64,000 nucleotides of DNA from Mustelus asterias (lineage: Eukaryota): contig NC_135804.1 of the NCBI RefSeq assembly GCF_964213995.1, positions 68,572,001 through 68,636,000 on the forward strand, read 5' to 3'. Below, piece after piece: positions 19,550 to 59,518 of the stretch; positions within the stretch are counted from its first letter, which is position 1; every line of letters starts with the position of its first letter. Below the pieces are notes generated by a model. That model was not told where the DNA came from, ran no database searches, and was given only the letters and a program-made list of their open reading frames with translations. A program made the translations under genes and the position numbers.

Positions 19550-19604
19550 ATGTTGGCCAGTGTGGCAATTCCGTGCATTACTGTTCTCGGAATCATTTTC
19601 ACAG
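19550..19604 (+). CDS. Gene 1 exon 1: signal peptide MLASVAIPCITVLGIIFT(G)
   Basis: ATG, hydrophobic leader, phase-1 donor AG|GTATCT, and a 170-bp intron to the V exon. Homologous to the gene 2 leader (CxxVLGII). Confidence 0.8.
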
Positions 19605-19774
19605 GTATCTGCTCCTATTATGCTTTGTTTTCTCATTCAATCGCGTAGTTACGTATCTTTGTTTTGATGCAGCATGTTTCATTGTCCTTTACAAATATTA
19701 TCTCAACTCCTTTCCCTCACTCTTTCCCTCCTGTAATACGATATTACTATTACATTTTTACATTTTTCCCATAG

Positions 19775-20095
19775 GTCCCGGTGGAACTTCAGTCAGAGTC
19801 ACTCAGCTCCCTGAGAGAGTGAACACAATCACCGGTACGAACATTTCCTTTCATTGCTCGCTTCCTTTCTTTCAAGACGGCCCACGTGTGAATGTAAACT
19901 GGTGGAAAAAGGGTGACAATCAATATCTAAGGTCAGGACAAAATGACAGAATAATAACTGGTTTCAAGACTAAATTCAGCGGCTTTCTTCGGATAATTAA
20001 TGTAAATGTGCAGGACACAGGAGTATACTATTGCATTGTCACGCATCAAAACAAAACAGCTGGAAATGGAACTGGATCTAATTTAACAGTATGGG
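19775..20095 (+). CDS. Gene 1 exon 2: Ig V-set domain with a germline-joined J-like strand
   Basis: Acceptor tttttcccatag; VTQ...FHC...VNWW...LRI.NV..QDTGVYYC...GNGTGSNLTV; donor G|GTACGT; 321 bp, phase 1-1. Confidence 0.93.
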
Positions 20096-20480
20096 GTACG
20101 TATGAAAAAATGTAAATAAGATTCATCTGACTGCAATATTTCAAACTTCGAAACAGAGATTTTGATTTGAAGAATTCAACTTTTTAATTAATTTCAACGA
20201 TCAATTTGTACACATTCCAATTGCACTGGTGATTGCTGCATGCTGATGTATGTTGCAATGTTTCAAAAATAATGATAAAGGCGAACATTTTCTGCGAAAT
20301 GTTTGGTCCTGACGTGTATTCAACAAACAATTGAAGTTAAAATTTCCATATTGGATAAGTTGCATACCTCGGCATTAATAGACAGTGTTGGGGATCTGAT
20401 AAAGAGAACGCACATTTCTTATCCTATTTCGTGGTGTAATTCGCCTACGTTGATTGCGGAGGGCTGTGTGCTTGTATTCG

Positions 20481-20639
20481 GCCACTCACCTGAAGCCACT
20501 TACCTGAGGAAGGGGCTTGGAGCTCCGAAAGCTTGTGTGGCGTTTGCTACCAAATAAACCTGTTGGACTTTAACCTGGTGTTGTTAAACCTCTTACTGTG
20601 TTTACCCCAGTCCAACGCCGGCATCTCCACATCATGGCT
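20481..20639 (+). mobile_element. Penelope pLTR fragment
   Basis: Matches 15032-15126 (CAAATAAACCTGTTGGACTTTAACCTGGTGTTGTTA). Confidence 0.85.
20501..20537 (+). ncRNA. Minimal hammerhead motif, copy 2
   Basis: UAC-CUGAGGA-A-GGGGC-uugga-GCUCC-GAAA-GC-UU-GUG. Confidence 0.65.
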
Positions 20640-21269
20640 TCTATTCGGGCCAGCTGTTCCACTGGTTGATGGCTTATTTCTTAAGGTCATATTTTTAACG
20701 GTTGAATTACACACCGTCTAATTTGAACCAAACCCTCCTCATCTTTCACCCATCATTTTAGGCTCCAGCAAGCGTGAAATCATCCGGGTCCTTGGTGCAA
20801 ATTCTAACTAACTTGATAAATTAAACTTCCCAGATAGTTTTTAGATTCAATGGGGTGAAATTCACCCGCAGTGGAACCGCAAAATTAGCAAACATCCCAA
20901 ATTACACTGCGAGCAATGTTCTTCTGAATTAGAATAGAAGATAGGGCGAGATTTGTATTGGGCACGAACTTACTTTCTCTCGCGTGTTTCTTTTTTTTTA
21001 TTTGTCCCCATGAAAACAGTTTAAATTACAAGCAAAATACCGGCGATACGTGAGAATGTCGTCAGATTTAATTGTCACTACAGATAGTGCAATCTAAATA
21101 ACTATCCTCCCATTGCCCCACGCCAGGGTTACGTCCAACAATGGATTGGAACACACCGTTTAGCTGGTCATCGAGATCAATGGTATTAACTGTAACCGAG
21201 TTGGTGTCACACTGTTGTCTCTGAGCCACGATGATCTTGGTTCAAATCAGCCCCATATCTGACTCCATA

Positions 21270-21371
21270 TTTCCACTCCATCTGACGAAGGAACTGCGCT
21301 CCGAAAGCGAGTGTCGTTTGCTACCAAATACACCTGTTGGACTTTAACCTGGTGTTGTTAGACTCCTTACT
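21270..21371 (+). mobile_element. Penelope pLTR fragment with mutated hammerhead copy 3 (21279-21313)
   Basis: CAU-CUGACGA-A-GGAAC-ugc-GCUCC-GAAA-GC-GA-GUG; the conserved U16.1 is replaced by G. Confidence 0.8.
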
Positions 21372-21487
21372 ACGATTTTGAAGAGCAGGGGAGCTATCCA
21401 CAGTTATCCCCGAGTTATCTCCGGTGTCCAGGCCAATATTTCTCCTTCATCAACATCACAGAAACAGACGAACTGATCATGATCACG

Positions 21488-21552
21488 TTTGATTTGATTT
21501 ATTATTGTCACATGTATGAGCATGCAGTGAAAAGTATTGTTTCTTGCGTGCA
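21488..21552 (-). mobile_element. Rex1-type 3' tail fragment
   Basis: Near copy of 5700-5762 (tttgatttgatttattattgtcacatgtat...). Confidence 0.8.
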
Positions 21553-21720
21553 CGCTGTTGTTTCTGGAAATTTCCTGTTCACAGATTTGCTGCCAAATGT
21601 TCATCAGTACAAAAGTGACAGCATTTGAATTGTTCTGCATTGATTGCTGGGCGTTTGAGACGTCCGGTGGTGTGAAACGTGTTATATAACTACCAGTCTT
21701 TATATTTTTCATTGTTCTAG

Positions 21721-22032
21721 TTCCACCAACCCCATTGAAAATTAAACCTCAGCAACTTGAAACGGATCCAGCTGCACCGTTGACTCTTCTGTGCACCACA
21801 TCTCCTTTTTCCCCGAAGAATATCAGTTTCACTTGGTATAAGGATGGCACTATAACTAAAATAGGGATCAATACCATCATTAAACCCAGCACCAATGGAC
21901 TCTATGAAGCTTCCAGCCAGTTGCAAGAGGCGCAGCCTGCCCGGTCCCTAACTGTTTATACCTGTCTGGTCTTTCACAGTGCGCTCCAAATTCCAGCCAT
22001 AACCACTCACATTGTCACCTACCCAAACACAG
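21721..22032 (+). CDS. Gene 1 exon 3: Ig C1-set domain
   Basis: Acceptor ttcattgttctag; LTLLC...FSP..I.FTWYKDG...GLYEASSQL...YTCLVFHSAL; donor G|GTAAGA; 312 bp, phase 1-1. Confidence 0.93.
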
Positions 22033-23059
22033 GTAAGATTTCAGATATAATCATATAAATTTACAGTTTTGCAAAACGTTATTTCACTCAGCCTTTCGGT
22101 GCAGCCTCTTTGAAAGAGCTGTCAGATCTATTACGTCGACAGCAGCATTTCTCCCACAACCGGCAAATCAGAATCATTAGCCTTTATATCCAATTGCCTT
22201 TTGGAAATAGCTATATGAATTATTTCCAGCAAAATTTCAGGCAGTACGTTCTAAATCTTCACAATCTCGGGTTAGAAAATAATTCTCCCCACAGCCCCTT
22301 TATTATTTGACAATGGTTTTCGATTCAGAACTATTCATGAGACCCACTTTTTGCAGAACACATTTTCCCCTAATTGATAAAATACACCTGTCATAATTTT
22401 GCAAACTTTCCGTTAGATCTCACCTTAATATTTTCCTATTGTGTTGAAAAGAATCATAGTTCCAAATCTCGCCACGTAGCCGAAGGCCCTCATCCTTGTT
22501 AAACCTGGAAAACATCCTTTGTTATTCTCTCCGAGACATTGGCATTATTCCTAATATGAATTGTACACTGTACATTTGTATGACTTCCATTATACAATGG
22601 TTCTCTCGCACAGCTAATTATCCGAAAAGTTTCACTGATCAACATTTCAACTTCCCAACAACCATTTGAAGATTTATAGGTATCTCAGAATTTACATTGC
22701 CTGAGATTATCTACGTTGATTTAAGCAAAATGCACACTTTATAATTATTTGCATTAAATTGCACTTGCCAGTTGTGACCACTTTCCCTGTTCTATGAAGT
22801 GCTGAATTCTGCTGCTATCGTCATAATAGTGACCAATGTTGTAGGATTTATAATCTTCAAATTGTACTCCCATATCATATAAAGAAATAGTCCTAATGTT
22901 GAACCCAGATCCAGTCAAAAACAACAACTTACCACTGCTCTCTACTACCTATAATTTAGCCAATAATGTATCTAAAGTGCCACCGTTCATCAAATCCCAA
23001 GTGGTTATTTAAACATAATAAAAGCACCCCTCGACATTTTTATTTTGGTTCATAATACT

Positions 23060-26000: not shown

Positions 26001-26690
26001 AAGTTTTGCCACAAGCCCCCACATGTTAGTATGGATGACATCGCAGGATCAATAAGGTTGGCTGTGTTGTTGTCAGTGCAGAAATCAATGCCTGGTCGTC
26101 CGTTCGGTTTCAGTCCCCTTTGACTTTCAAGCAGTTTGTTACAACTCAGTGACTTGCTGGAACATTTCAGAGAACATTTACGAGAGAGCTTTGGGCCTGC
26201 AATTGCATGTCGGCCAGATCAGGTTTCCTTTCCTAAAGGTGAAGCATATCGGTATTTCTGACAAAATTAATTCCAAATTCTAATAATTGAATTTAAATTC
26301 CACCAACTAACTTGGTGGGATTTGAACTCATCCCCAGTGCATTAGCTTGGATCTCTTGATTGCTAGCCCAGTAATATTATCTGACACGGTTGGGATGTTT
26401 CCTCTTGTGAGTGAGTCCTGAGCTAGGGGAGACTGTTTTAAAATTAGGCGTTGTCCTTTTAGGACAAAGATTAGGATCTTTATTTTCTCCTTAAAACATA
26501 TCAACTCAGAAAGCCATTGAATATTTTAAAGATGGATGTGGATAGATTCTTGTTAGGAAAGGGAATCAAAGGTTATCGGGGTAAATGGGAATGTCGATTT
26601 CAAAACACAAACAGATCAACCAGGATCAAATTACGGAGCAGGCTCGAGGGTCAAATGGCCCACATATGCTCCTTTTTCGTATGACTGTAG
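23060..26690. mobile_element. Mosaic of old degenerate LINE fragments, including a + strand CR1 at about 23420-24420
   Basis: Decayed RT motifs (DFQRHLTK / GCVVLRF frame remnants; gtaagaccacatctgg; aatgagaggtgatctt) and repeated 3'-end blocks ccagcatttatt...cc.aatt at 23100 and 25100. Confidence 0.65.
25603..25686. repeat. Tandem repeat, about 3 x 29 bp
   Basis: cagggtacattctgtgacattgccacatg units starting at 25603, 25632 and 25661. Confidence 0.9.
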
Positions 26691-26810
26691 CCGCCTGTAC
26701 CTTAATACAAATGACCGGAAAGATTGAATGTTTGCTTTGTTTCAGAGGTTGATTATATTGAATTGAATAGTGTAGTGTTTTTATTTGTACAATTCATTTA
26801 ATTCTTGCAG

Positions 26811-26921
26811 GAGATCAGAGCACCAATTTCTTATTGATTTCTGCATCGGCAGGAGGCGGGTTCGTTCTCCTGATGTTCGGTCTCATTATTGTGAAGCATT
26901 GTGTCACAAAGAAAAATAACG
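26811..26921 (+). CDS. Gene 1 exon 4: stalk plus uncharged transmembrane helix
   Basis: Acceptor ttcttgcag; GDQSTNFLLISASAGGGFVLLMFGLIIVKHCVTKKNN; donor G|GTAAGA; 111 bp, phase 1-1. Confidence 0.9.
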
Positions 26922-27344
26922 GTAAGAAAGAATTTCTCCTTTTCACTCAAGTAAGCGCAACTTTTGAAGAGGGAGGGAGAGCGAGGGGAAACGTCCTGTT
27001 ACAGGTAAAGAGGAACTTGTTTGCAACTGAACAGTGCAAACAATATCCTGTCACACAGAAGCAGAGGTGATCACTGCTGATTATAGCCGCTTGTCCCGAT
27101 ATTTGGTGTACGTGCAATCTCTCACAGTCACTCCTGTTGGCTTCATTTATACAGATCAGGCGAGAGAAGTCAGTGATCCCCAAAGGCATATCCGCAAATA
27201 CGTAGCAAAAGTCTCGCACACAATACCCTGGGTACAACAATAGGCAAAGGGGCCATATTTTAGGGGCATTTGACTGGGGTGACGCACAGCTGCAGGTTCA
27301 AAAGACTAATAAAAAATGCCCTGAAAATCAATGATTGTCAAGTA

Positions 27345-28308
27345 TCATTTTGTCATTTTCATAAATGACCTGGATGAGGGATGGGTTGGTAAGTTTGCCG
27401 ACGACACGAAGGTTGGTGGTGTTGTGGATAGTTTGGAGGGATGTCAGAAGCTGCAGCGTGACATAGATAGGATGCAAGACTGGGCGGAGAAGTGGCAGAT
27501 GGACTTCAACCCGGATAAATTTGTAGTGGTACATTTTGGCAGGTCAAATGGGATGAAGGAGTATAGTATCAACGGTAAGACTCTTAGCAGCGTAGAGGAT
27601 CAGAAGGACCTTGGGGTCCGGGTCCATAGGGCTCTTAAATCGGCCTCGCAGGTAGAGGAGGTGGTTAAGAAGGCGTATGGTGTGCTGGCCTTCATCAATT
27701 GAGGGATTGAGTTGAGGAGTCGGGAGATAACGATGCAGCTTTATAAGACCCTCGTCAGACCCCACTTAGAGTACTGTGCTCAGTTCTGGTCACCTCGTTA
27801 CAGGAAGGATGAAGAAATTATTGAAAGGATGCAGAGAAGATTTACAAGGATGTTGCCTGGATTGGTTGGCATGCCTTATGAGGCTAGGTTGAGAGAGCTC
27901 GGTCTATTCTCATTAGAGAGACGAAGGATGAGAGGTGACCTGATAGAGGTGTACAAGATGTTGAGAGGTATAGATCGGGTGAATTCTCGGAGGCTTTTTC
28001 CCAGGGCTGAAATGGTTGCTACGAGAGGACAGGTTTAAGGTGCTGGGGAGTAGGTACAGAGGAGATGTCAGGGGTAAGTTTTTCACTCAGAGGGTGGTGG
28101 ATGAGTGGAATCGGCTGCCGTCAATGGTGGTGGAGGCAAACTCGACAGGGTCTTTTAAGAGACTTCTGGATCAGTACATGGGATTTAATAGGATTGAGGG
28201 TAAAAGGTAAGCCTATATATAGGCTTAGGCAGGTAGGGTCATGACCAGCGCAACTTGTGGGCCGAAGGGCCTGTTTGTGCTGTAGTTTTTCTATGTTCTA
28301 TGTTCTAT
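27345..28308 (+). mobile_element. CR1 3' fragment
   Basis: FINDLD, KFADDTK, LVRPHLEYC; tail (TTCTATG)n. Same family as 55280-56700. Confidence 0.9.
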
Positions 28309-28505: not shown

Positions 28506-28787
28506 TACGGTGGCACAGTGGTTAGCACAGCTGCCTCACAACGCCAGGGACCCGGGTTCAATTTCAAGGTCATTGCCTGTGTGGAGCGTGCACATTCTCC
28601 CGTGCCTGTGTGGGTTTCCTCCGGGTGCTCCGGTTTCCTATCACAGTCCAAAGATGTGCAGGTTAGGTTGATTTGCCCTGCTAACTTGACCTTAGCAGGG
28701 TAAATATGTGGGGTTACGGGAGTAGGGACTGGAAGGGATTGTGGTCGGTGCAGACTCGACGGGCTCAATGGCCCGTTTATTCTGCCC
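28506..28787 (+). mobile_element. HE1-like SINE
   Basis: tRNA-like head, V-domain and partial tail. Confidence 0.85.
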
Positions 28788-28841
28788 ACGCGATTTCCGA
28801 AGTAGACTCGGAAGGCACGGCCGGCATCAAAACAACTTACT

Positions 28842-29277: not shown

Positions 29278-29321
29278 GTATGCAGAAAGATGGTGAAAGA
29301 TGTCATTATCCGGAACAGCAG
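29278..29321 (+). CDS. Gene 1 exon 5: short cytoplasmic exon GMQKDGERCHYPEQQ
   Basis: ttcctag acceptor and CAG|GTATGT donor; 44 bp. It converts phase 1 to phase 0, exactly what is needed to join exon 4 to exon 6. Confidence 0.8.
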
Positions 29322-36938: not shown

Positions 36939-37489
36939 AGACTCAGTCCACCCTCTGGGTGCTGGTGCCGGAGGGATGGGACTCTGCCGGGATGCAATGG
37001 ACAGTAGTGATTTCATTTAATTCTGGATTCTGGGGCTGCAAATTATGGCTTATTCATATCATTCTGCAGAGGAGTACATGACAAGAGGTTTTTTTAAATT
37101 GTCTTTCAGTTCATTCAGGGAGCTGTCGAAATGTTGCCACCTTATGCTGCACCAGATACGACCAATTCCCAAAAAACTCCAAGACATCAAGAACAGGCAC
37201 CACACATCCAGGTAGGATCGAGCAAAGACGCGGAATGCGTAATTAACAAGTAGTGTATGGGAAAATACGTTTAATACTGCTTTGCTACTTCTGTTTGCGT
37301 TAGCACTAATTCTGCGAGACTCCCGCTATTATGTCAGTTATAGCTCCGTTTGGCTTCAGAGTCACAAGATTGTAGGATATAGCCTACTCAGGAGACTTGA
37401 GAGTAAAGTATAATTTGGCACTCCTGTGCATTACTGAGGGAAGTCTGCATTACCTGAAGTACCGCATTTCAAAGGAGACGTTAGACTGA

Positions 37490-38244: not shown

Positions 38245-38412
38245 ACCAAGCAAAGACTACCCAATAATAAGCTGACGTATGCTGCTCTAGATATGATAGG
38301 ATCAAAGAAAACAGCAAAGCCAAATCATAAGGATAAAAGCACGGAATATGCTGAGCTAAAGATGGGAAAACAAAGAGCAGGAGTTATCTACACCGAACCG
38401 AAAGCCACCTGA
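38245..38412 (+). CDS. Gene 1 exon 6: cytoplasmic tail with ITIM (LTYAAL), ITSM-like (TEYAEL) and a third tyrosine (VIYTEP); stop TGA
   Basis: Acceptor gatttcacag, phase 0: TKQRLPNNKLTYAALDMIGSKKTAKPNHKDKSTEYAELKMGKQRAGVIYTEPKAT*. Absent from the ORF track. Joined CDS is 1011 nt (336 aa plus stop). Confidence 0.88.
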   Translation, partial: TKQRLPNNKLTYAALDMIGSKKTAKPNHKDKSTEYAELKMGKQRAGVIYTEPKAT

Positions 38413-42809: not shown

Positions 42810-43073
42810 CCATGGCATTATGGAATCCCTACAGGAGACCATTGGGCCCATTAAGCCTGCGCCCAAGCCCCATCCTCGTAAACTGCACGCGTTTACCCTG
42901 CTAAGCCCCATGACATTATGGTTAATCAACCTAACCTGCATATCTTTGGAGTGTGGGAGGAGACTGGAACATCCGGAGGAAACCCATGCAGACAGGGGAA
43001 GAATGTGCAAACTGAATCTGCGTCCTTGGCGCTGTGAGGCAGTAGTGCTAACCATTGTGCCACCGTGCCGCCC
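42810..43073 (-). mobile_element. HE1-like SINE (diverged)
   Basis: Head GGGCGGCACGGTGGCACAATGG and V-domain. Confidence 0.8.
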
Positions 43074-44565: not shown

Positions 44566-44917
44566 GGGGCGGCATGGTAGCACAGTGGGTAGCACTGCTG
44601 CTTCACAGCTCCAGGGACCTGGGTTCGATTCCCGGCTCGGGTCACTGTCTGGGTGGAGTTTGCACATTCTCCTCGTGTCTGCGTGGGTTTCCTCCGGGTG
44701 CTCCGGTTTCCTCCCACAGTCCAAAGATGTGCGGGTGAGGTTGATTGGCCATGAGAAAATTGCCCCTTAGTTTCCTGAGATGCGTAGGTTAGAGGGATTA
44801 GTGGATAAAATATGTTGGGATATGGGGGTAGGGCCTGGGTGGGATTGTGGTCGGTGCAGACTCGATGGGCCGAATGGCCTCTTTCTGCACTGTAGGGTTC
44901 TATTGTTCTATGATTCT
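44566..44917 (+). mobile_element. HE1-like SINE nested in the hAT element
   Basis: Full head, V-domain and tail. Confidence 0.9.
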
Positions 44918-45284: not shown

Positions 45285-46872
45285 ACAAAGAACAAACAAA
45301 GACCAAAGAACAATACAGCACAGGAACAGGCCCTTCGGCCCTCCAAGCCCGCGCCGCTCCCCGGTCCAGGATTGAATCCTGAATCCAGGATCCCCGCCCA
45401 ATTTTCTAGCCTATCTACATCCTAATATCCTATCCACCGAGCTGTCCCTCACAGCTACGATGCTTTGTTCATCACAACCTATTAACTCACAGACCATGTG
45501 ATCTCCAGGGAGAGGCGAAAACCCAGAGTGAAAACCCCAGGGCCAATATGGGGAAAAGAAAATCTGGGAAATTCCTCTCCGACCCCCTGAGGCGATGGAA
45601 ACGAGTCCAGGAGATCACATTGGCCCTGATCAGAAAATGCTTCCCAACCCTATTCATTTCCACTTCTGCTTTACGAACACCATCTGAATTCCCTGCCCCT
45701 GAGACAGGTTCCCAACTATCCGCAGTCTCACTCTGTACTGGCACCAGCAAGATGATCATAGAATGAAGCCTTGAAACGAGAAACAAAGAACAATTAGCCC
45801 GCGCCGCTCCCTGGTCCAAACTAGACCACTCTTTTGTATCCCTCCATTCCCACTCCGTTCATATAGCTGTCTCAATAAGTCTTAAACGTTCCCAGTGTGT
45901 CCGCCTCCACCACCTTGCCCGGCAACACATATAGGCCCCCACCACCCTCTGTGTAAAATATGTCCTTCTGATATCTGTGTTAAACCTCCCCCCCTTCACC
46001 TTGAACCTATGACCCCTCGTGAACGTCACCACCGACCCGGGGAAAAGCTTCCCACCGTTCACCCTATCTATGCCTTTCATAATTTTATACACCTCTATTA
46101 AGTCTCCCCTCATCCTCCATCTTTCCAAGGAGAACAACCCCAGTTTCCCCAATCTCTCCTCATAACCAAGCCCCTCCATACCAGGCAACATCCTGGTAAA
46201 CCTCCTCTGTACTCTCTCCAAAGCCTCCACGTCCTTCTGGTAGTGTGGCGACCAGAACTGGACGCAGTATTCCAAATGCGGCCGAACCAGCGTTCTATAC
46301 ATCTGCAACATCAGACCCCAACTTTTATACTCTATGCCCCGTCCTATAAAGGCAAGTATGCCATATGCCTTCTTCACCACCTTCTCCACCTGTGACGTCA
46401 CCTTCAAAGATCTGTGGACTTGCACACCCAGGTCCCTCTGCGTATCTACACCCTTTATGGTTCTTCCATTTATCGTGTAGCTCCTCCCTACATTATTCCC
46501 ACCAAAATGCATCACTTCGCATTCATCAGGATTGAACTCCATCTGCCATTTCCTTGCCCAAATTTCCAGCCTATCTATATCCTTCTGTAGCCTCTGACAA
46601 TGTTCCTCACTATCTGCAAGTCCTGCCAGTTTTGTGTCGTCCGCAAACTTACTGATCACCCCAGTTACTCCTTCTTCCAGATCATTTATATAAATCACAA
46701 ACAGCAGAGGTCCCAATACAGAGCCCTGCGGTACACCACTAGTCACAGGCCTCCAGCCGGAAAAAGACCCTTCCACTACCACCTTCTGTCTTCTATGACC
46801 AAGCCAGCTCTCCACCCATCTAGCCACCTCCCCCTTTATCCCATGAGATCCAACCTTTTTTCACTAGCCTAT
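45285..46872 (-). mobile_element. 5'-truncated CR1 nested in the hAT element, with an extended composite 3' UTR
   Basis: ORF 45859-46827 RT. The transposase frame FVAKFDP|FLSNHIK is split by this insertion. Confidence 0.9.
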
Positions 46873-51419: not shown

Positions 51420-53040
51420 ACTTCTTTAGTGTATGGTCTACGTCGAGTTTGATGTGACTTTTGGCCAGATCTCACATGTCAGATTGACCAAAAAAAAGAA
51501 CCCATTATATCCAGGGAAAAGTGGCAAGTTAGTGCCAAAATTGATTCAGTGGCAGGCAACAGAGGGTAATGTTTGACTGCCATTTCTGGGACTTGAGAAA
51601 TAGTTTCCCGTGATGTTCCAAAGAGTTCAACGCTGATCCCTTTCTGTTGGTTGTAATTAACAATGACTCAATCTTAAATATTGGCGGAGGGGGCATGATT
51701 AAGAAGTTTTCAAGTAGTACAAAAACGTCTTCGTATGGTTGATTGTGTGGATGAAAAGTTTAAATTGCGGGAAAATCTAAATGGGCTCGCCAGATGGCCA
51801 GGAAACTGTTAAACGGAATACAAATGAAAAACAAGGCAAACAAACACACAATAAATAAACTCTTACTGAGAAGTATGAAGAGGAACACAGGAACCTTGGA
51901 GAATATGTCCATAGATATCTGAAATTAACAGAACAGTTAGGTAGGTAGGTTGACCATGGAGGCTTATCAAATATTATCCTTTATACGTTGGCATATCAGG
52001 GCAGGGAAGTTACGAGAGACCAGTTACCTTCAGATGTAGTATTGCTTAGAGTTCTGCTCACCACATTACAGGAAAGATCGAATCACACTGCAGATATCAT
52101 AGAGAAGGTTTAAGAAGGTGATGCTCGGAGTGAAGAATTTAAGCTATAAGGAAATATTGATTATGTAGCACAATGGTTAGCACTGCTGCTTCACAGCTCC
52201 AGGGTCCCGGGTTCGATTCCCAGCTCGGGTCACTGTCTGTGTGGAGTTTGCACATTCTCCTCGTGTCTGCGTGGGTTTCCTCCGGGTGCTCCGGTTTCCT
52301 CCCACAGTCCAAAGATGTGCGGGTTAGGTTGATTGGCCAGGTTAAAAATTGTCCATTAGAGTCCTGGGTTGCGTAGGTTAGAGGGATTAGCGGGTAAAAT
52401 GTGTGGGGGTAGGTCCTGGGTGGGATTGTGGTCGGTGCAGACTCGATGGGCCGAATGGCCTCCTTCTGCACTGTAGGGTTTCTATGTTTCTATGTTTTCA
52501 TTTGAACATAGCGGGGCGAAGGCAGCGGGGAGGAAAAGAGGGAAGATTTATTTAATGTGAACAAAATAATGAGTCGCCTAGATGGAATACATAGGAAGGA
52601 TGTATTATTCTTGGTAAACAGACCATCTTGATTTGGAACCATATCGCCGATCCTTGATTGTCACTGTCTCAAAACCTATAACTTGTGGTTGTATCTACCC
52701 CAGATGCATTGCAGCGGTAAAGAAAGTTGATCACCACCAACTTCTCTGGGACGGATGAGCAGCAAATGCCAGCCTTATCAAAGAATCTCACATCCCACGA
52801 AAGAATGAAGGAAAAGTAGAAAGGGCATGGGATTAGTCGACTTGTGAAAATGATTAGATGGCAATTGCGGAGCTGAGGGCTTGGAACTCACTGCTTGAAA
52901 TACTGGTGGCGGCAGAAAACCTCATTGCATGAAAAACTTTGATATGCACTTCAAGTAATGCAACCTTCAGAGTTACAGAACAAGAGCTGCAAGTGGGGTT
53001 TGGCTGCAGAGCTCTTTTTCGGCTTTGTATAGTAAAGAAT
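51420..53040 (+). mobile_element. Highly degenerate CR1 fragment, split by a SINE
   Basis: Remnants agagggtaatg..., ttctgctcaccacattacaggaaagat. Confidence 0.6.
52165..52497 (+). mobile_element. HE1-like SINE
   Basis: Matches 9021-9376; tail (TTTCTATG)n. Confidence 0.9.
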
Positions 53041-54321
53041 CATGAACAGTAAAATAGAGTAAATTAAACTAAAATATTTTCAAATACATCATTCATCAGC
53101 TGGACGAGTGCTGGAAGTGCTGAACATGGGGACACATGAGGTAAAAGACAAGCTCGTGGGGAAAACGGGGAAGTGTCTACAGAGAACGTAGAGTGGCGGG
53201 AAGTGTAGCTAAGGTAGCTGTGGGAGTCAGTGGGGCTACAGCAGGTAATCATTCGCAGTCTAACCCCAGAACTTGAGACAGAGAGGACGAGGGCGGAACC
53301 GGTGGTGAATTATATTCAAAGGATGTAGCGGAGGAAACTCGAAACCAGCTTAGTGAAATGATCAAGTTCAGGTTGAACGCAAAATGTAGCATCGAGACAG
53401 TGTTCCGAATACTCACCGACCAGAAAACAGAGATGAAGGTGGAATCTGAAAGTGTCTGGAACAAAAGAAAATAGTTTCACTTAACACCTGGAGAATGAGG
53501 CAAAGTTAGAGCGTATCCTGCAAAAATAAATGTTTTGTATTTGATACCAATGATGTCCAGTTAGCTTCAGACAACAACATGTTCACAGCTGGAACTCAGC
53601 TGCTCCGAGAATGTTATGTGACGTCTGAACAGCAAGCAAATGGATAAACAGCAAAGTGGATTGAATAGAAGGATAGAAACCCCGCCGTGAGGAAATCTGA
53701 CCCAAAGCTGGGAATCAACATCCCCCCCCCCCCGCCCCCCCGTCCCCGCTCACCATCACCGCCCCGCCCCACCTCCCCCCCCCCCCCCCCACCCCCCTCC
53801 CCTGCCCCATGACCTTCTTTACTGGGACATCAGTGCTTTCATGATATATTTTCTGTGAATCCGTCCCTCACAAACAATAGTGCCGAAAGGGGAGAGGGAA
53901 GGCGTGATGGTGGGGCGGGGGTGGGAGGGCGGGTGCGTGGACATTGGGGGTGGGGGGAGCGGGGAGATGTGTTTGCACGTAACTCATTTTTTCCCAAGTC
54001 CTGCGACCTTCTCTTATTGACATTGTGGCCCCGCCCATTCTATTCGCATTTAGCCACGCGTTCCAGCCTAATTTAATGAGATGAGTCAACTTTCTGTCAA
54101 ACTGCCGCTTTCCAAACGCTCTGTCATTGACGTTACAAACGACGAAAAAGAAAATAGTTTAACTTGAGCTGACGTTCCTGTTAAAGTCACATTCATAAAT
54201 CACCTCTTAAAATAGATTCCAACATTTCATGCAACAGCTCGCCAGGTCATCTATCAAACCGGGTTGTCGACGAAATACTTGCAGACTAACAGAGGTGCAG
54301 CTCATCAATAGGCTTTTAACG

Positions 54322-54367
54322 ATGTCTGCATGTCAATGCGTATGGGTCCTGGGAATTATTTACGAAG
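54322..54367 (+). CDS. Gene 2 exon 1: leader MSACQCVWVLGIIYE(G)
   Basis: Homologous to the gene 1 leader; donor AG|GTATTT, phase 1. An upstream in-frame ATG exists at 54229. Confidence 0.7.
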
Positions 54368-54437
54368 GTATTTTCCACAACAAATTGTTTTCTCCTTTAG
54401 AATCTTCTAATCCTGTTTTCTTTTTCATCCGTGTGTC

Positions 54438-54569
54438 NNNNNNNNNNNNNNNNNNNNNNNNNNNNNNNNNNNNNNNNNNNNNNNNNNNNNNNNNNNNNNN
54501 NNNNNNNNNNNNNNNNNNNNNNNNNNNNNNNNNNNNNNNNNNNNNNNNNNNNNNNNNNNNNNNNNNNNN
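54438..54569. other. Assembly gap (132 N) in gene 2 intron 1
   Basis: Run of N. Confidence 1.
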
Positions 54570-54624
54570 ATGGTTAAAGTACAATTTATTCACATGTAAC
54601 AACTACATTTTAAATATTTTATAG

Positions 54625-54936
54625 TTGCATCCACCTCGGTGTCGCAATCGCCTGAAAGCACCATTCTGATGGCAGGTTCAGACATTACCTTCCACTGCAC
54701 AGCGAACTCTGTCCAGCTTCACTCAAATGTGGATGTTTTTTGGTGGAAACTTGGCGATGAAACCTTATTAGAACCGAATTCTGATGGCAGAAAGCGATTC
54801 TTTCCTTTTAAAAGCGGAGCGACTTCTTTCCAGATCCTGAATGTCCGTGTCTCCGACTCTGGATCCTATTACTGCGGAGTGCGAGACACAGGCAGCAGGA
54901 TCCTCAATGGAACTGGATCCAAACTTGTTGTGCACG
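54625..54936 (+). CDS. Gene 2 exon 2: Ig V-set domain with a germline-joined J-like strand
   Basis: Acceptor ttttatag; VSQSP...FHC...VFWW...FQILNVRVSDSGSYYC...LNGTGSKLVV; donor G|GTAAGA; 312 bp. Confidence 0.93.
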
Positions 54937-55279
54937 GTAAGAGACATGGGGCATCTGCCATTGTAGGATGCTATATAGAAGATCAGAGGCAGTTTTGATA
55001 AATCAGGGGGATTAACATGGCAAATTTGTGAGGTTTATGGGGATAGGGCCTGGGAGGGATTGTTGTCGGTGCAGACTCGATGGGCCGAATGGCCTCCTTC
55101 AGCACTGTAGGATTCTTAATTCTGTCATCAGTGAATTGATTTCTAATGTTAATTTGTGGAAGAGGATTAGGGAACATTATTTAATGTCGGGCCTAAAACC
55201 ATACCACAATCCGCACCCATTGTTTGTTATGCATCTATATTCTACCTGTTTATTAGCACAGGGTTCCACGGCATTATTT

Positions 55280-56700
55280 AGAAACATAGAAACATAGAAA
55301 AACTACAGCACAAATAGGCCCTTCAGCCTACAAGTTGTGCCGAACACATCCCTACCCTCTCGACCTACCTATAATCCTCCATCCTATTAAGCTCCATGTA
55401 CTCATCCAGGAGTCTCTTAAAAGACCCGATTGAGTTCGCCTCCATCACCGCTGATGGCAGCCGATTCCACTCGCCCACCACCCTCTGTGTGGAAAACTTA
55501 CCCCTAACATCCCTCCTGTACCTACCCCCCAGCACCTTAAACCTGTGTCCTTTCGTAGCAGCCATTTCCACCCTGGGAAAAAGCCTCTGTGAGTCCACCC
55601 GATCTATGCCTCTCAACATCTTATATACCTCTATTAGGTCTCCTCTCATCCTAAGTCTCTCCAAGGAGAAAAGACAGAGCTCCCTCAGCCTATCCTCATA
55701 AGGCATGCCACTCAATCCAGGCAACATCCTTGTAAATCTCCTCTGCACCCTTTCAATCTTTTCCACATCCTTCCTATAGTGAGGCGACCAGAACTGAGCA
55801 CAGTACTCCAAGTGGGGTCTGACGAGGGTCTTACATAGCTGCATCATTATCCCCAGACTCCTAAACTCAATCCCTTGATTGATAAAGGCCAGCACACCAT
55901 ACGCCGTCTTAACAACCTCCTCCACCTGCGGGGCCGATTTCAGAGTCCCATGGTCCCGGACCCCAAGGTCCTTCTGATCCTCTACCGTACTAAGAGTCTT
56001 TCCCTTTATATTGTACTCCTTCATCCCATTTGTCCTACCAAAATGGACCACGACACATTTATCTGGGTTGAAGTCCGTCTGCCACTTCTCCGCCCAGTCT
56101 TGCATCCTATCTATGTCCCTCTGTAACTTCTGACATCCCTCCAGACTATCCACAACCCCACCAACCTTCGTGTCGTCGGCAAACTTACCAACCCATCCCT
56201 CCGCTTCCTCATCCAGGTTATTTATGAAAATGACAAACAGCAAGGGTCCCAGAACAGATCCCTGGGGCACACCACTGGTGACTGACCTCCATTTAGAAAA
56301 AGACCCATCTATACCCACTCTCTGCCTCCTTTGGGCAAGCCAGTTCTGGATCCACCGGGCAGCAGCCCCTTGGATCCCATGCCCTCTCACTTTTTCTAGA
56401 AGCCTTGCATGGGGGACCTTATCGAATGCCTTGCTAAAATCCATATAAACCACATCTACCGCCTTCCCTTTGTCAATGTGTTGAGTCACATTTTCGAAGA
56501 ACTCCACCAGGCTCGTAAGGCGCGATCTGCCCTTGCCAAAGCCATGCTGAGTATTCTTGAGCATACTAAACCTCTCTAAATGCTCACATATCCTGTCCCT
56601 CAGGATCTTCTCCATCCGTTTACCAACCACTGAGGTTAGACTCACCAGTCGGTAATTACCTGGGCTATCCCTATTCCCCTTCTTGAAAATAGGAACCACT
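55280..56700 (-). mobile_element. 5'-truncated CR1
   Basis: ORF 55365-56762 RT; a 17-bp tandem duplication cttgaaaataggaacca at the 5' junction (56682-56718). Confidence 0.92.
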
Positions 56701-57915
56701 ACTTGAAAATAGGAACCATTTAGATGAGGGATTTTACCTAAAAATGCCGTGTGTGGTAGCAAAAAGGATCTTGATTGACTGGCGATATGAATAGAACACA
56801 GAACATTTTTGTTACGAGGGTCTGTACTTTAGAATTCTATTTCAGAATCCTCGGGTTTGATATTCCTGTGGTACCACCTTCAAAAATTATAATAGTAAGA
56901 TTACTCAAACTGATCGGGATATGAAACCGATTAGTTCGCTGTCGATTGGAATTAATTAGAGGGCTGAATTATATAAGAAGTACTGATACCAATGACAGCA
57001 GGACGCCATTCCTCATCCGGGGTGTTTGACACATACATGGTTAAACCTTCAGATAACACGAAATCGAGTAAATTTCAGGTCGCTGGAAACACAGTCCCAT
57101 TCCGATCATTTCTGGAAATTAGATTTGATACTCGTTTGGCATATGACTTTGGAATCCAACCTGTGGATTTTACGGAGCCACTTCGTGATGTCAGACCAGA
57201 TCTATAGTTACTTTTGCTTCGTGTTAGGATTGAAACAAAAAGCTGCACTGCTCGTTCCCCTCCCCTTCGCAGTTCCACGGTTCATCCCTTCAAACGTCAA
57301 TTGTTGCCATGTCCTTCCAATCAAATTTGCAGCAATTTCCCATTTTCCCCTTTAAAATATTGAACACCATATGATTAATATTCTGCGCATTAAGATTATC
57401 GTGAAACCAATGTATCACTTTTCTTGGCTGTAAGAATTTCTCCCTTGCTACAGAAATAGAAGCCTTAACTCAATCAACTTGAATTAATATTATCTACATG
57501 AGTTTTGTTTATTTACATGGTGCGTAATCATAATGATTAAATATTTCTGAATAAATATCAAAACATATGCCTTTGTTTTTCCATTTGAAATTTGGTATTC
57601 TTGCCTTTGCCCAGATGAGTGCAAAATATGAAGCTTCCACAGCATGCTTCTTTCTCCAGGCAATATTTATTTGCGAGACCAAAACCAACCTGAATGTCCT
57701 GCGCATTACTTTCTGCTAGTTCTGTAATATTGTTCATTAGTGTTCGCATATTAGTCTACAATTTGTAATGGGAATTTAAATTTAACGTTTTGTCGTGAGT
57801 TAGTTTGGTTCCTGCGACCAAAAACCATCTGACCATCGCAAGGAAGACTGGATCTTAAAGGGGAATAAAGTACACAAGTACAAACCATCAGTGTTTTCGT
57901 TTCGCTGTTCCACAG

Positions 57916-58224
57916 CTTCCCCAGAACCCATAAGACTGATCCCCAACGTTTCCCGCACCAACTCATCTACTCGAACACTTGTGTGTAAAACGGCTGAGTT
58001 CTACCCAGAGTCTGTCACCTTCATTTGGTATAAAAACGACAGCAACATTGTGACTGGGATCAGCACCATTCAAACGGGGAACGCAGAGGGGGAGTATGAA
58101 GCTTCCAGTACTTTGGAAATGGAAGGTCCAGCTCAGAGCGGTATTGTGTATACCTGTGTTGTGTCTCACCTCACACTGCAGTATCCAATCATGGCTGTTT
58201 ACTTGGACTCCATTTCTAATTCAG
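57916..58224 (+). CDS. Gene 2 exon 3: Ig C1-set domain
   Basis: Acceptor gttccacag; TLVC...FYP..VTFIWYKN...GEYEASSTL...YTCVVSHLTL; donor G|GTAAGA; 309 bp. Confidence 0.93.
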
Positions 58225-58878
58225 GTAAGATGCCAATCTTTGTACAGATATAGCCGGTCACCGTTTGCTATGTATCCACGTTAATGTCGTTCAATCCTCT
58301 GAACTTAATTACGTTCATTTAAAGACTGGTTCGTCTTGGGGATTTGTAAAGCGGATAAAGGAGGGAAAGAGAGCGATCTATTACGAATATTATCCATTAC
58401 CCAATTTCACTCAGATTCAATGGGTTGCCATTTAACGCAGAACAAAGGAATACATGGAAAATCTTTTCACTCATGACTTTAGAATTTCCTCGTTATGACA
58501 AGCTGCTGATACCCTTGTATAGATATTCCACTTTATGAGACACATCACCCTGCACTCATGTGGCTGTAATTTTCGACATGTGCCTAGCTGTAAAATCCTG
58601 GTTTTTGTGTCAATGGAAATGCAAACGATACATGTTTATTGATGTAATACAAACAGGGGATGTAATCAGCTGATTGTGAAGTCAGAATCAATAACAGTAC
58701 CAGGTCATGTGAGTTAAAAGTCTTCGGCTCTGTTACTGAAAAATATTTGCAATATATTTTATTCAATAGACTGGTTGCGTATCACTTCCTTCAACGGGAA
58801 AATGGTAATTGATTATTCATATTAATAGCAATAATTATATTACGTTCGCTGTTTTCACTATCATTATGATTTTCACAG

Positions 58879-58992
58879 ATCCTGGGCACACTACCATTTA
58901 TCTACAGATTTCTAAATATGCAGGAGCTGTATTGATATTTCTAGCCCTGAGCGCTTTCATTATGAAGAGCTACCAACTCCGTAACTGTAATG
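58879..58992 (+). CDS. Gene 2 exon 4: stalk plus transmembrane helix containing Lys
   Basis: Acceptor ttttcacag; DPGHTTIYLQISKYAGAVLIFLALSAFIMKSYQLRNCN; donor G|GTAAGG; 114 bp. Confidence 0.88.
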
Positions 58993-59477
58993 GTAAGGAG
59001 CCAACCAAGTTGCTTATCTTTGATACAAGCGAATAATTAATCCAATCGAGAGCATACCTCCCACCACACTGTTTTAACCCAGCATTAGTACAAAAACGCA
59101 GATATTCTTTGAAGCTTTTTCCTCTCGAGCAGATATTCTGAAACGACAAAGATGAAAATAGAAATATCTTGATTAACAACGTTCATCGCATTGAGCAGGC
59201 TTCAGACCAAACTACTTCCGACAACTTGCTCTGAATACTCTGCTCAACAGCTGTGACAGATTCCACCCCAGCCGCTGAGCCAATTCATAACATTCTAACA
59301 CGATTAACGACATTCAAAATAAAAAAGTAAATCTATCGTATCTCGCATTGTTAACTGATGCTTTCTTTGAAATAAACTAATCAGTTCTTCCTTACGCCGT
59401 ATCCCATTTGTATACCAAATGTTAATAATACCCACTCATTAGTTTCTGAAATGAGTTATTTATAAACGTTTTAGCAG

Positions 59478-59518
59478 ACTACCTGTCAGACAAGAATATT
59501 CCATCCGCCCACCTATAG
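59478..59518 (+). CDS. Gene 2 candidate terminal exon DYLSDKNIPSAHL*
   Basis: A nearby phase-1-compatible acceptor (ttttagcag) giving a short tail with no ITIM. Alternative exons exist. Confidence 0.4.

What the first reader, a model, noticed from the sequence alone, without database searches (positions are those of the whole stretch)
19550..59518. Tandem non-rearranging V(J)-C1 receptors forming an apparent inhibitory/activating pair
Seen: two same-strand genes share the exon plan leader, V with built-in J-like strand, C1, TM, all phase 1, with no RSS at the V exons. Their C1 domains are only about 35-40% identical by hand, implying an old duplication. One has ITIM/ITSM motifs and the other a TM lysine. 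Known: V-C1 is the ectodomain plan of TCR chains and Ig light chains. Non-rearranging relatives include SIRP (V-C1-C1), PRARP-type V-C1 genes and NKp30 (single VJ), and paired receptors usually cluster. Inference: a possibly undescribed cartilaginous-fish paired innate receptor family resembling the pre-RAG antigen receptor precursor. I cannot assign orthology without a search.
Basis: partly seen in the sequence, partly recalled or inferred. Interest (0 to 1): 0.9.

Follow-up and report, generated by a model that had tools for sequence, protein, structure and literature searches.

The report
Shark germline V-C1 immune receptor genes
Two neighbouring shark genes encode antibody-like surface receptors that need no DNA rearrangement, and they belong to a large receptor family of sharks, rays and chimaeras that gene databases list under a jumble of borrowed names.

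Summary
Two same-strand genes each have a leader, a V exon with a built-in J-like strand, a C1 exon and a TM exon. All these exons are in phase 1, none has an RSS beside it, and the two genes are 39% (V) and 37% (C1) identical. The N gap lies inside the leader-V intron of gene 2 and touches no coding sequence.

The window matches Mustelus asterias RefSeq models: gene A is XP_078068150.1 ("uncharacterized", with most of V skipped) and gene B is an "immunoglobulin lambda-1 light chain-like" model.

Both belong to a multigene family. Every family-level hit whose name I looked up is from a shark, ray or chimaera. Automatic names vary: SIRP-alpha-like, SIRP-beta-like, Ig-lambda-like, tapasin-related-like, NCR3-like. 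I found no paper on it.

Lineages A and B each include sharks and batoids, so the duplication is old. The long-tailed members share a four-tyrosine, SIRP-alpha-like tail. Gene A keeps the distal ITIM and ITSM.

Gene B's TM lysine is real, but all 6 orthologues with a TM have glycine there. With ectodomains this different, the two genes are not a classical inhibitory/activating pair.

No RNA run of this species was available, so splicing rests on orthologous gene models and one hint from a contig.

The parts
19550..19604 (+). Gene A leader exon (ATG at 19550, 18 codons plus 1 base, phase 1)
   Evidence: Sequence. tblastn finds the leaders of orthologues here (P0001 residues 1-19, 74% identical).
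19775..20095 (+). Gene A V exon with built-in J-like strand (NGTGSNLTV), phase 1 to 1
   Evidence: V-set, 36.1 bits. 80% identical to the Scyliorhinus canicula model P0001. No RSS beside it.
21721..22032 (+). Gene A C1-set exon, phase 1 to 1
   Evidence: C1-set, 37.7 bits. Matches P0110 = XP_078068150.1; 100% identical over 103 tree columns.
26811..26921 (+). Gene A stalk/TM exon (uncharged TM FLLISASAGGGFVLLMFGLIIV), phase 1 to 1
   Evidence: matched by P0110 and P0002.
29278..29321 (+). Gene A small cytoplasmic exon (MQKDGERCHYPEQQ), phase 1 to 0
   Evidence: Found only through the RefSeq model P0110 (100% identical). Splice sites read.
37110..37211 (+). Gene A cytoplasmic exon carrying the decayed first tyrosine pair (PPYAAP; second tyrosine replaced by His)
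   Evidence: 100% identical to P0110; tail alignment.
38245..38412 (+). Gene A last coding exon: ITIM LTYAAL, ITSM TEYAEL, then VIYTEP and the stop codon
   Evidence: 100% identical to P0110. The motifs are kept in Callorhinchus, Heterodontus and Heptranchias relatives.
54322..54367 (+). Gene B leader exon (MSACQCVWVLGIIYE, phase 1). The RefSeq model starts at an upstream in-frame ATG at 54229
   Evidence: P0012 residues 1-15 are 87% identical. P0201 is 100% identical over 54229-54366.
54438..54569 (.). Assembly gap inside the leader-V intron of gene B
   Evidence: It starts 70 nt after the donor and ends 55 nt before the acceptor; no coding sequence abuts it.
54625..54936 (+). Gene B V exon with built-in J-like strand (NGTGSKLVV), phase 1 to 1
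   Evidence: V-set, 32.8 bits. 100% identical to P0201 over 100 columns. 64% identical to the Heterodontus model P0012.
57916..58224 (+). Gene B C1-set exon, phase 1 to 1
   Evidence: C1-set, 47.6 bits. 69% identical to P0012. In run X1 the fit of one contig starts at the exon border, with 27 unfitted letters before it.
58879..58992 (+). Gene B stalk/TM exon. The TM IYLQISKYAGAVLIFLALSAFIM has a lysine (codon 58914-58916). The RefSeq model reads on through the donor to a stop at 59034-59036
   Evidence: Orthologues have Gly at the lysine position.

Best explanation
These are two intact members of a multigene family of germline-joined V(J)-C1-TM immunoreceptors. Every family member I could name comes from a cartilaginous fish. 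The window matches the Mustelus asterias genome.

Each gene should give a type I membrane protein with a membrane-distal V domain, one C1 domain, a stalk without cysteine and a single TM. The V domain's G strand is encoded in the germline as N-G-T-G-S-x-L-x-V.

The family comes in three signalling forms:
- long tails with a SIRP-alpha-like module of four tyrosines (ITIM, ITSM-like, ITIM, ITSM)
- short tails with an arginine or lysine in the TM
- short tails with an uncharged TM

Gene A belongs to the first form. Inferred: after tyrosine phosphorylation its distal ITIM/ITSM pair would recruit SHP-1/SHP-2-type phosphatases and damp activation. Its proximal pair has decayed.

Gene B belongs to an old short-tailed lineage. 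Only the Mustelus copy has a TM lysine, which could couple it to a DAP12-like adaptor (inferred, weak).

Binding is presumably through the CDR-like loops, which are the most variable part of V across the family. The ligands are unknown.

Shown here: the exon anatomy, the domain types, the absence of RSS, the relatives and their trees, and the motifs. Inferred: expression, surface topology, signalling and ligand binding.
For: Anatomy and phases. Domains.

Identity with RefSeq models: P0110 (XP_078068150.1, M. asterias) is 100% identical on six of its eight tblastn segments, with no higher-scoring match outside gene A. P0201 (M. asterias) matches gene B.

Only two V exons and two C1 exons were found when 14 family proteins were run against the whole window by tblastn.

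Taxa:
- 6 of 6 hits elasmobranch
- 37 of 37 chondrichthyan
- 10 of 10 chondrichthyan
- 10 of 10 chondrichthyan among divergent representatives
- 7 of 10 looked up and 5 of 10 are family-level, and all 12 are chondrichthyan. Six of the other eight are from other or bony fish (a bony-fish Ig heavy chain, an MHC class II beta chain, a lungfish 'SIRP-like' protein and similar); the other two are shark proteins with 7 to 10 C1 stretches, not this family.

In a rescoring of 196 stored proteins, family C1 domains score about 49-217 bits (three models near 49-50), while the eight multi-domain or non-family proteins that I later used as outgroups reach at most 46.2 bits.

Trees: in the C1 tree gene A sits in a 13-row clade (SH-aLRT 99) and gene B in a 9-row clade (96). 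Each clade holds sharks and batoids. The V tree agrees for B (8 rows, 96) and more weakly for A (11 rows, 92).

J-like G-x-G strand: 67 of 71 family V domains have it, and 44 of those 67 have an N-G-S/T sequon where Ig and TCR have Phe or Trp.

The tail alignment shows the four-tyrosine module from Callorhinchus to sharks and rays. The SIRP-alpha motifs ITYADL and LTYADL, and the ITYADLNL...TEYASI peptide, are given in PMC5413580 and PMC5589908 (passages).

Family members with Arg or Lys in the TM and short tails are listed.

Variability peaks in the CDR1-, CDR2- and CDR3-equivalent stretches.
Against: No RNA run of this species was available. In the one read-laying run, X3, X5 and X6 behaved as DNA because their contigs also lie on introns. 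The only hint of splicing is one low-depth contig of a run merely guessed to be RNA, from a differently coded organism.

The RefSeq model of gene A lacks most of V: it uses an internal donor at 19833/19834 and a 5' exon at 15512-15571 that encodes no signal peptide. The full V isoform is therefore inferred from orthologues only.

Gene A's proximal tyrosine pair has decayed.

Gene B's lysine is not conserved.

The taxon limit rests on proteins whose names I could look up, not on all 150 listed hits. The word-based searches can miss distant bony-vertebrate relatives.

PRARP sequences could not be compared.

Confidence: 0.72

Rival explanations
1. They are true SIRP genes: cartilaginous-fish co-orthologues of SIRP-alpha, -beta and -gamma that have one C1 domain instead of two. 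Gene A would be the SIRP-alpha equivalent and gene B a SIRP-gamma- or SIRP-beta-like form.
For: The tail module of two ITIM/ITSM-like pairs resembles SIRP-alpha in motif and order. Relatives have Y-x-x-L-N-L...K-K...P after the first tyrosine, and gene A has K-L-T-Y-A-A-L-D against LTYADL.

NCBI's pipeline names many members PTPNS1-like or SIRP-beta-1-like.

The family profile hits SIRP-alpha 2wng at E = 2e-31. Its domain 3 scores 46.3 bits and shares the VPPT linker.

The Amblyraja model P0016 has V-C1-C1.
Against: The window genes have one C1 exon each.

SIRP-alpha d1-d2 scores 66.3 bits against the family profile. The lambda V-C part of 2rcj_C scores 81.5 bits and single light chains about 91-101 bits.

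SIRP V domains are not among the best 60 PDB hits of either V exon.

Lungfish 'SIRP-like' C1 domains fall with the outgroups.

The two C1 domains of P0016 are near-identical copies, so they are a recent duplication or a model artefact.

Confidence: 0.3
2. They are cartilaginous-fish orthologues of the PRARP genes, the non-rearranging IgSF genes first described in chicken.
For: PRARP is cited as a non-rearranging VJ gene family linked to the MHC (PMC10751288 passage) and is listed among joined-VJ IgSF members (PMC11599192 passage). That PRARP has a V-C1 layout is my recollection only.
Against: Nothing was tested. The PRARP paper is not held, and no PRARP sequence was available from any tool. 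No bony-vertebrate protein reached family-level scores among the hits I could name.
Confidence: 0.12
3. Genes A and B encode the two chains of a germline-encoded, TCR-like heterodimer.
For: They lie in tandem on the same strand. Each has the V(J)-C1-TM layout of a TCR chain, and they are old paralogues like alpha and beta chains.
Against: Neither stalk has a cysteine for an interchain bond.

Gene A's TM is uncharged, and the B lineage's TM is uncharged in 6 of 6 orthologues.

The Phe or Trp of the J motif, which packs in the Ig/TCR V-V interface (recalled), is an Asn in an N-glycosylation sequon in 44 of 67 family members, including both genes here.

The two tails are of different signalling types.
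Confidence: 0.04
4. One or both genes are unexpressed relics, or annotation artefacts of a repeat-rich region.
For: No RNA evidence exists from this species. The RefSeq model of gene A skips most of V. Introns and flanks are full of reverse-transcriptase ORFs.
Against: All 11 coding exons are open and have consensus splice sites in matching phases. The canonical Ig residues are intact (Cys, Trp, Y-x-C, and C-x-V-x-H in C1). V is 80% and 64% identical to orthologues in other species.
Confidence: 0.07

Closest known systems
SIRP family (SIRP-alpha/PTPNS1, SIRP-beta, SIRP-gamma)
   Same: Both are non-rearranging with a V domain that has a J-like G-x-G strand followed by C1-set domains. Both families have inhibitory, charged-TM and short-tailed forms. 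The tail of two ITIM/ITSM-like pairs has similar motifs. The family profile hits 2wng at E = 2e-31.
   Different: Here there is one C1 domain, not two. The ectodomain scores no closer to SIRP than to Ig lambda chains. The family is greatly expanded, and every member I could name is chondrichthyan. A and B are old lineages, not recent near-identical copies. The CD47 link is unknown.
Ig light chains (lambda) and TCR chains
   Same: Same V(J)-C1 layout, with V and C1 each as a single phase-1 exon. The highest per-stretch PDB profile scores are to lambda V-C (81.5 bits within 2rcj_C, about 91-101 bits for single light chains). The best full-length V matches are TCR-alpha and lambda V domains.
   Different: There is no RSS and no separate J segment; V and J are one exon. 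The genes have their own TM and signalling tail. There is no interchain cysteine. The J-motif Phe/Trp is replaced by a glycosylatable Asn.
UrIg and UrIg2 (non-rearranging shark VJ genes; PMC12227049, sections 4 and 7 read)
   Same: Both are germline-joined VJ exons followed by C1-type domains, in elasmobranchs. UrIg2 (PDB 9dmx) is the top whole-chain PDB hit of both C1 exons.
   Different: UrIg has three C domains and is secreted. UrIg2 has nine to eleven C domains (paper). The high score is a sum over three domains: per domain 59.0, 31.7 and 39.5 bits against the family profile. Carcharodon and Heptranchias proteins with 7 to 10 C1 stretches (I take them for UrIg2-like; not checked) fall with the outgroups. 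The paper does not mention ITIM or SIRP.
PRARP (Fu et al. 2019, J Immunol; only its title seen, in a reference list)
   Same: Non-rearranging IgSF genes with a joined VJ (passages).
   Different: Not comparable here: neither the sequences nor the paper were available.
NKp30/NCR3
   Same: Joined VJ domain. Some family members have an arginine in the TM and a short tail, like NKp30 (the NKp30 feature is recalled). Some members are auto-named NCR3-like.
   Different: NKp30 has no C1 domain (recalled). Both window genes have one.
Teleost NITRs and other paired Ig-like receptor families (KIR, LILR; recalled)
   Same: All are multigene families with inhibitory ITIM forms and charged-TM activating forms. 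All have variable V-type domains and expansions specific to a lineage.
   Different: Their membrane-proximal domains are not C1-set (recalled). No sequence relationship was tested here.

Membership tests
SIRP family | Ectodomain V-C1-C1 | tested here: not met
   One C1 exon per gene. tblastn with 14 family proteins finds C1 only at 21708-22037 and 57909-58337.
SIRP family | SIRP-alpha-type tail with two ITIM/ITSM-like tyrosine pairs | tested here: inconclusive
   Gene A keeps the distal pair (LTYAAL, TEYAEL). Its proximal pair has decayed (PPYAAP; Tyr replaced by His). Relatives keep all four. The similarity to SIRP-alpha was judged by eye against motifs quoted in papers, not scored by a tool.
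SIRP family | Sequence closer to SIRP than to other V-C1 proteins, and shared locus | tested here: inconclusive
   SIRP-alpha d1-d2 scores 66.3 bits against 81.5-101 bits for lambda chains; d3 scores 46.3 bits.
SIRP family | Binds CD47 | not testable with these tools
   Needs a binding experiment.
Classical paired (inhibitory/activating) receptors | Near-identical ectodomains with opposite signalling parts | tested here: not met
   V is 39% and C1 37% identical. A and B are separate clades that predate the shark/batoid split.
Classical paired (inhibitory/activating) receptors | Activating partner has a conserved charged TM residue | tested here: not met
   Lysine is present in the Mustelus gene B. 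It is glycine in 6 of 6 B-lineage orthologues with a TM.
Rearranging antigen receptor genes (IgL, TCR) | V segment ends in an RSS, with separate J segments | tested here: not met
   V runs in frame through the J-like strand to a splice donor. No heptamer lies beside the V exons, and heptamers are not enriched (13 found against 9.6 expected).
Rearranging antigen receptor genes (IgL, TCR) | V-set plus C1-set ectodomain | tested here: met
   Pfam V-set and C1-set hits above their cut-offs. The best PDB stretches are lambda V-C.
UrIg/UrIg2 | Joined VJ followed by three or more C1-type domains | tested here: not met
   A single C1 exon per gene. Architecture as described in PMC12227049, sections 4 and 7.
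PRARP | Orthology to the chicken PRARP genes | not testable with these tools
NKp30/NCR3 | Single VJ domain without a C domain | tested here: not met
   Both genes have a C1 exon. The NKp30 layout is recalled.
Chondrichthyan V(J)-C1-TM family (unnamed; defined here) | Leader, V with N-G-T-G-S-x-L-x-V strand, VPPTP or SPEP linker, one C1, TM; family-level C1 score | tested here: met
   Both genes nest in starred clades of the family.

The most novel reading that the evidence does not exclude
This family is the surviving, expanded descendant of the ancestral V(J)-C1-TM receptor lineage of jawed vertebrates. Its ectodomain still scores like an Ig lambda or TCR chain while its tail is SIRP-alpha-like. 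On that reading, SIRPs and the chains invaded by the RAG transposon would be branches of one receptor lineage, and that lineage would already have had SHP-recruiting inhibitory forms and charged-TM activating forms before rearrangement arose.
Probability: 0.15. Interest if true: 0.8.

Novelty: new variant of a known kind. Interest (0 to 1): 0.5.

Why it matters
Non-rearranging VJ-C1 genes are the material for current arguments about how antibodies and T-cell receptors began. UrIg and UrIg2 were reported in 2023 and 2025 (PMC12227049).

This is a membrane-bound V(J)-C1 family with exactly the layout of a TCR chain. It occurs in chimaeras, sharks and rays, it has inhibitory and charged-TM forms, and it hides under at least six different automatic names in RefSeq.

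If it is truly undescribed, it gives a large comparison set for V and C1 phylogenies. It would also be a candidate innate receptor system of cartilaginous fish, and a possible deep root for the SIRP checkpoint family.

For this particular window the result is more modest: two ordinary members of that family, one inhibitory-type and one short-tailed.

Tried and rejected
UrIg or UrIg2 identity was rejected. The papers describe three or nine-plus C domains, and the high PDB score is a sum over domains.

A classical inhibitory/activating pair was rejected.

A short tail exon for gene B at 59130-59156 was considered from the sequence. No homologue or model supports it. RefSeq instead reads through the donor at 58992. 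I leave it open.

RNA evidence: the single run search found no run on record as RNA. Laying X5, X6, X1 and X3 showed DNA-like coverage for X3, X5 and X6 and no exon-exon joints. Nearly all joints listed lay within, or had one end in, the repeat at about 55.1-56.7 kb.

ESM Atlas on the tail of P0163 gave no usable hit.

Literature: searches used all ten searches. None found a paper on a shark V-C1-TM or SIRP-like family. Subscription journals are mostly not held. I did not open the supplements of PMC12227049 (figures S1 and S2, table S1), which may list further VJ genes.

I did not score the SIRP-alpha peptide quoted in PMC5589908 against the shark tails with a tool, because it is not a stored sequence. 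That comparison is by eye.

Flanks: only repeat-derived ORFs were seen, so the window holds no synteny information.

Full report
**What is in the sequence**

On the + strand there are two genes with the same plan.

Gene A:
- leader 19550-19604 (MLASVAIPCITVLGIIFT, then one base)
- V exon 19775-20095
- C1 exon 21721-22032
- stalk/TM exon 26811-26921
- three cytoplasmic exons: 29278-29321, 37110-37211 and 38245-38412

Gene B:
- leader 54322-54367
- V exon 54625-54936
- C1 exon 57916-58224
- stalk/TM exon 58879-58992

Every leader, V, C1 and TM exon is bordered by AG and GT and is in phase 1. Gene A's tail exons run from phase 1 to 0, then 0 to 0, then 0 to the stop codon.

Pfam calls both V exons V-set (36.1 and 32.8 bits, cut-off 26) and both C1 exons C1-set (37.7 and 47.6 bits, cut-off 21).

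Running 14 family proteins against the whole window by tblastn finds exactly two V exons and two C1 exons. The rest of the window is mostly reverse-transcriptase ORFs.

**The gap**

The N run at 54438-54569 starts 70 nt after the donor of gene B's leader exon and ends 55 nt before the acceptor of its V exon. It is therefore intronic, and no reading frame crosses it.

The corresponding intron of gene A is 170 nt. In the assembly, gene B's is 257 nt, of which 132 are N.

NCBI's own model of gene B (P0201) joins the leader to V at exactly these two sites, and the orthologues have the same junction.

Whether the DNA is continuous across the gap cannot be known from here. I did not fill it.

**No rearrangement signals**

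Each V exon continues in frame through a J-like G strand to an ordinary splice donor. The strand reads A-G-N-G-T-G-S-N-L-T-V in gene A and L-N-G-T-G-S-K-L-V-V in gene B.

The heptamer CACAGTG occurs 13 times in 64 kb against 9.6 expected, and 15 of 100 shuffles reach 13. None is next to a V exon.

**Whose genes these are**

A HMMER search with gene B's C1 against 1.84 billion representatives gave 641 hits at E up to 0.001, of which the best 150 were listed.

One of them, P0110, is XP_078068150.1, "uncharacterized protein LOC144493123 [Mustelus asterias]". Six of its eight tblastn segments on the window are 100% identical, and the C1 and TM segments are lower only because the alignments ran on into intron. 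That match also revealed the 44-nt exon at 29278-29321, which I had not found.

P0201, [quoted passage not shown], is gene B.

So the window matches the starry smooth-hound genome, and both genes are already RefSeq predictions.

The gene A model is odd. It starts at an exon at 15512-15571 that encodes no signal peptide. It then leaves the V exon at an internal GT at 19833/19834, so it lacks most of V.

The full V exon is nevertheless open. It is canonical and 80% identical to the V of the Scyliorhinus canicula model P0001. The leader at 19550 matches the leaders of the orthologues.

**The family**

Three word-based searches and three name look-ups gave the following.
- 6 of 6 hits are elasmobranch.
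- 37 of 37 are chondrichthyan (Callorhinchus, Heptranchias, Heterodontus, Mobula, Scyliorhinus, Hypanus, Pristiophorus, Hemitrygon).
- 10 of 10 are chondrichthyan.
- 10 of 10 deliberately divergent representatives are chondrichthyan (also Stegostoma, Chiloscyllium, Narcine).
- the 12 family-level proteins looked up are all chondrichthyan. Of the other 8, two are shark proteins with 7 to 10 C1 stretches, one is a Scyliorhinus torazame hypothetical protein, two are lungfish "SIRP-like" proteins with three C1 stretches each, one is a ladyfish Ig heavy chain, one a teleost MHC class II beta chain and one a teleost Ig-like protein.

When 196 stored proteins were rescored domain by domain, family C1 domains scored about 49-217 bits, three models lying near 49-50. 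The eight multi-domain or non-family proteins that I later used as outgroups reached at most 46.2 bits.

The automatic names are a jumble:
- PTPNS1 (SIRP-alpha)-like
- SIRP-beta-1-like
- Ig lambda-1 light chain-like
- tapasin-related-like
- NCR3-like
- NCR3 ligand 1-like
- TCR beta-like
- MHC class II beta-like
- CD276 homologue

That is the mark of a family with no curated name.

Notes from this scan report many more such genes in this genome (52 notes match the words), including one 28.7 kb beyond the window. I did not check them.

**Age of the duplication**

The C1 tree had 119 rows: 109 unique family domains, 8 outgroup domains and the 2 window exons. Domains scoring under 48 bits or covering under 75 positions were left out, and duplicates were removed. 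The method was quick IQ-TREE with SH-aLRT support only.

Gene A sits in a 13-row clade (support 99) with Scyliorhinus, Heterodontus, Hemiscyllium, Heptranchias, Mobula, Leucoraja and Amblyraja.

Gene B sits in a 9-row clade (support 96) with Scyliorhinus, Heterodontus, Heptranchias, Pristis and Leucoraja.

The V tree of 73 rows agrees for B (8 rows, 96) and more weakly for A (11 rows, 92).

The A/B split is therefore older than the shark/batoid split, which I recall as being of the order of 250-300 million years or more.

Callorhinchus sequences form their own clades. The family as a whole is set apart from the 8 outgroups by a branch with support 89, which is not starred.

**Signalling parts**

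An alignment of tails shows a module that is conserved from Callorhinchus to sharks and rays:
- Y1, in x-x-Y-x-x-L, often followed by N-L...K-K...P-R-P
- Y2, in T-V-Y-A-Q at the end of one exon
- Y3, in K-L-T-Y-A-A-L
- Y4, in S-T-E-Y-A-E-L

Papers give the SIRP-alpha ITIMs as ITYADL and LTYADL (PMC5413580, passage). They give the SHP-2-binding peptide as ITYADLNLPKGKKPAP...TEYASI (PMC5589908, passage).

By eye the resemblance is close, and it probably explains NCBI's "PTPNS1-like" names. I did not score it with a tool.

In gene A the distal pair is intact (LTYAAL, TEYAEL). The proximal pair has decayed: Y1 sits in PPYAAP and Y2 is a histidine, as it also is in the Heterodontus A copies.

Gene A is therefore an inhibitory-type receptor by motif. 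Recruitment of SHP-1/SHP-2 is inferred.

Gene B has a short tail without such motifs. RefSeq reads through the donor at 58992 to a stop at 59034-59036. Some orthologue models splice on at this point, so the true end is open.

Gene B's TM carries a lysine in IYLQISKYAGAV. At that position Scyliorhinus, two Heterodontus copies, Heptranchias, Pristis and Leucoraja all have glycine, which makes 6 of 6 orthologues with a TM.

A DNA contig of run X3 that differs from the window at 21 places covers this exon. None of the differences printed falls in the lysine codon, but 22 differences were not printed.

The lysine is therefore real but specific to this lineage. Elsewhere in the family, arginine or lysine in the TM with a short tail is common. 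Examples are the Carcharodon model P0126, the Heptranchias model P0192, the Callorhinchus model P0174 and the Mobula model P0036.

So the family as a whole has inhibitory and activating-type forms. This tandem, however, is not a matched pair.

**Ectodomain features**

In an alignment of 43 family members, the invariant residues are the canonical Cys, Trp and Y-x-C of V, the two Gly of G-x-G, and the Cys, Trp, Cys and His of C1.

67 of 71 family V domains have the J-like G-x-G-x-x-L-x-V strand. In 44 of those 67 the residue where Ig and TCR have Phe or Trp is the Asn of an N-G-S/T sequon.

Neither stalk has a cysteine.

Both points argue against Ig/TCR-style V-V pairing or a disulfide-linked dimer. 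That is an inference.

Variability across the family is highest in the stretches equivalent to CDR1, CDR2 and CDR3.

**Nearest known proteins**

With single exons, the best full-length V matches in the PDB are TCR-alpha and lambda V domains.

The best whole-chain C1 match is UrIg2 (9dmx; E = 6e-21 and 4e-14), but that score adds up three domains.

With a profile of the family, the per-stretch scores are:
- lambda V-C part of 2rcj_C: 81.5 bits
- single light chains: about 91-101 bits
- SIRP-alpha d1-d2: 66.3 bits, plus d3 at 46.3 bits, with a shared VPPT linker
- UrIg2: 59.0, 31.7 and 39.5 bits

The ectodomain is thus about equally far from all three. It looks antigen-receptor-like outside and SIRP-alpha-like inside.

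**Expression**

The one run search found no run on record as RNA.

In the one read-laying run (54570-59600, starting after the gap), X3, X5 and X6 have contigs on introns as well as exons, so they are DNA.

X1 is only guessed to be RNA and comes from a differently coded organism. It has one contig inside the V exon (54681-54823, 4 differences). It has a second contig whose fit begins at 57915, with 27 unfitted letters before it. The base at 57915 equals the last base of the V exon, so this is what a V-to-C1 junction would look like.

That is a hint from one contig of depth 3.9, and no more.

Otherwise splicing rests on the agreement of the exon borders with RefSeq models in eight or more species.

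**Literature**

I read sections 4 and 7 of PMC12227049 (UrIg2) and searched it for terms. It does not mention SIRP, PRARP or ITIM.

I saw passages of PMC10751288 and PMC11599192.

The PRARP paper (Fu et al. 2019) and the first UrIg paper are not held. I saw only the title of the former, in a reference list.

Seven further searches found nothing on a shark V-C1-TM or SIRP-like family.

This covers open-access text only, and I opened no supplements.

**Verdict**

These are two ordinary, intact members of a large chondrichthyan family of germline V(J)-C1-TM receptors. The family is already present in RefSeq under misleading names and, as far as I could search, is not described in print.

The interest lies in the family more than in this tandem.

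Noticed in passing
window 15512-15571 and 19775-19833: NCBI's model of gene A (XP_078068150.1) starts at an upstream exon that encodes no signal peptide. It leaves the V exon at an internal GT after 20 codons, so the annotated protein lacks most of its V domain. This is either a V-less isoform or a model error.
   Followed up: partly
window 9215-9295, 18640-18753, 28600-28653, 42953-43009, 44646-44717, 52234-52314: The last 27 residues of the Scyliorhinus canicula family model P0001 match a dispersed repeat present at six places in this window. That model's C-terminus is probably an exonised repeat or a mis-annotation.
   Followed up: no
window 55365-56762 (- strand), inside the V-C1 intron of gene B: A 465-residue reverse-transcriptase ORF of a very high-copy repeat. 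Summed contig depths in the DNA runs reach hundreds of thousands to about two million over 55.0-56.7 kb. Similar RT ORFs lie at 7470-9125, 16717-18543, 45859-46827 and 61906-62847.
   Followed up: no
window 151-1026 (- strand): A 291-residue cysteine-rich ORF with no obvious relation to the receptor genes. It lies near other repeat-derived ORFs. I did not examine it.
   Followed up: no
proteins P0016 (Amblyraja radiata) and P0176 (Callorhinchus milii): Some family models have two C1 domains. In P0016 the two are nearly identical, which points to a recent exon duplication or an assembly or model artefact. This would mimic the SIRP V-C1-C1 layout.
   Followed up: no
proteins P0007 (Carcharodon, 'titin-like', 10 C1 stretches) and P0009 (Heptranchias, 7 stretches): Shark proteins with many C1 stretches topped the HMMER list because their domain scores add up. 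They are probably UrIg2-type genes under wrong automatic names.
   Followed up: no
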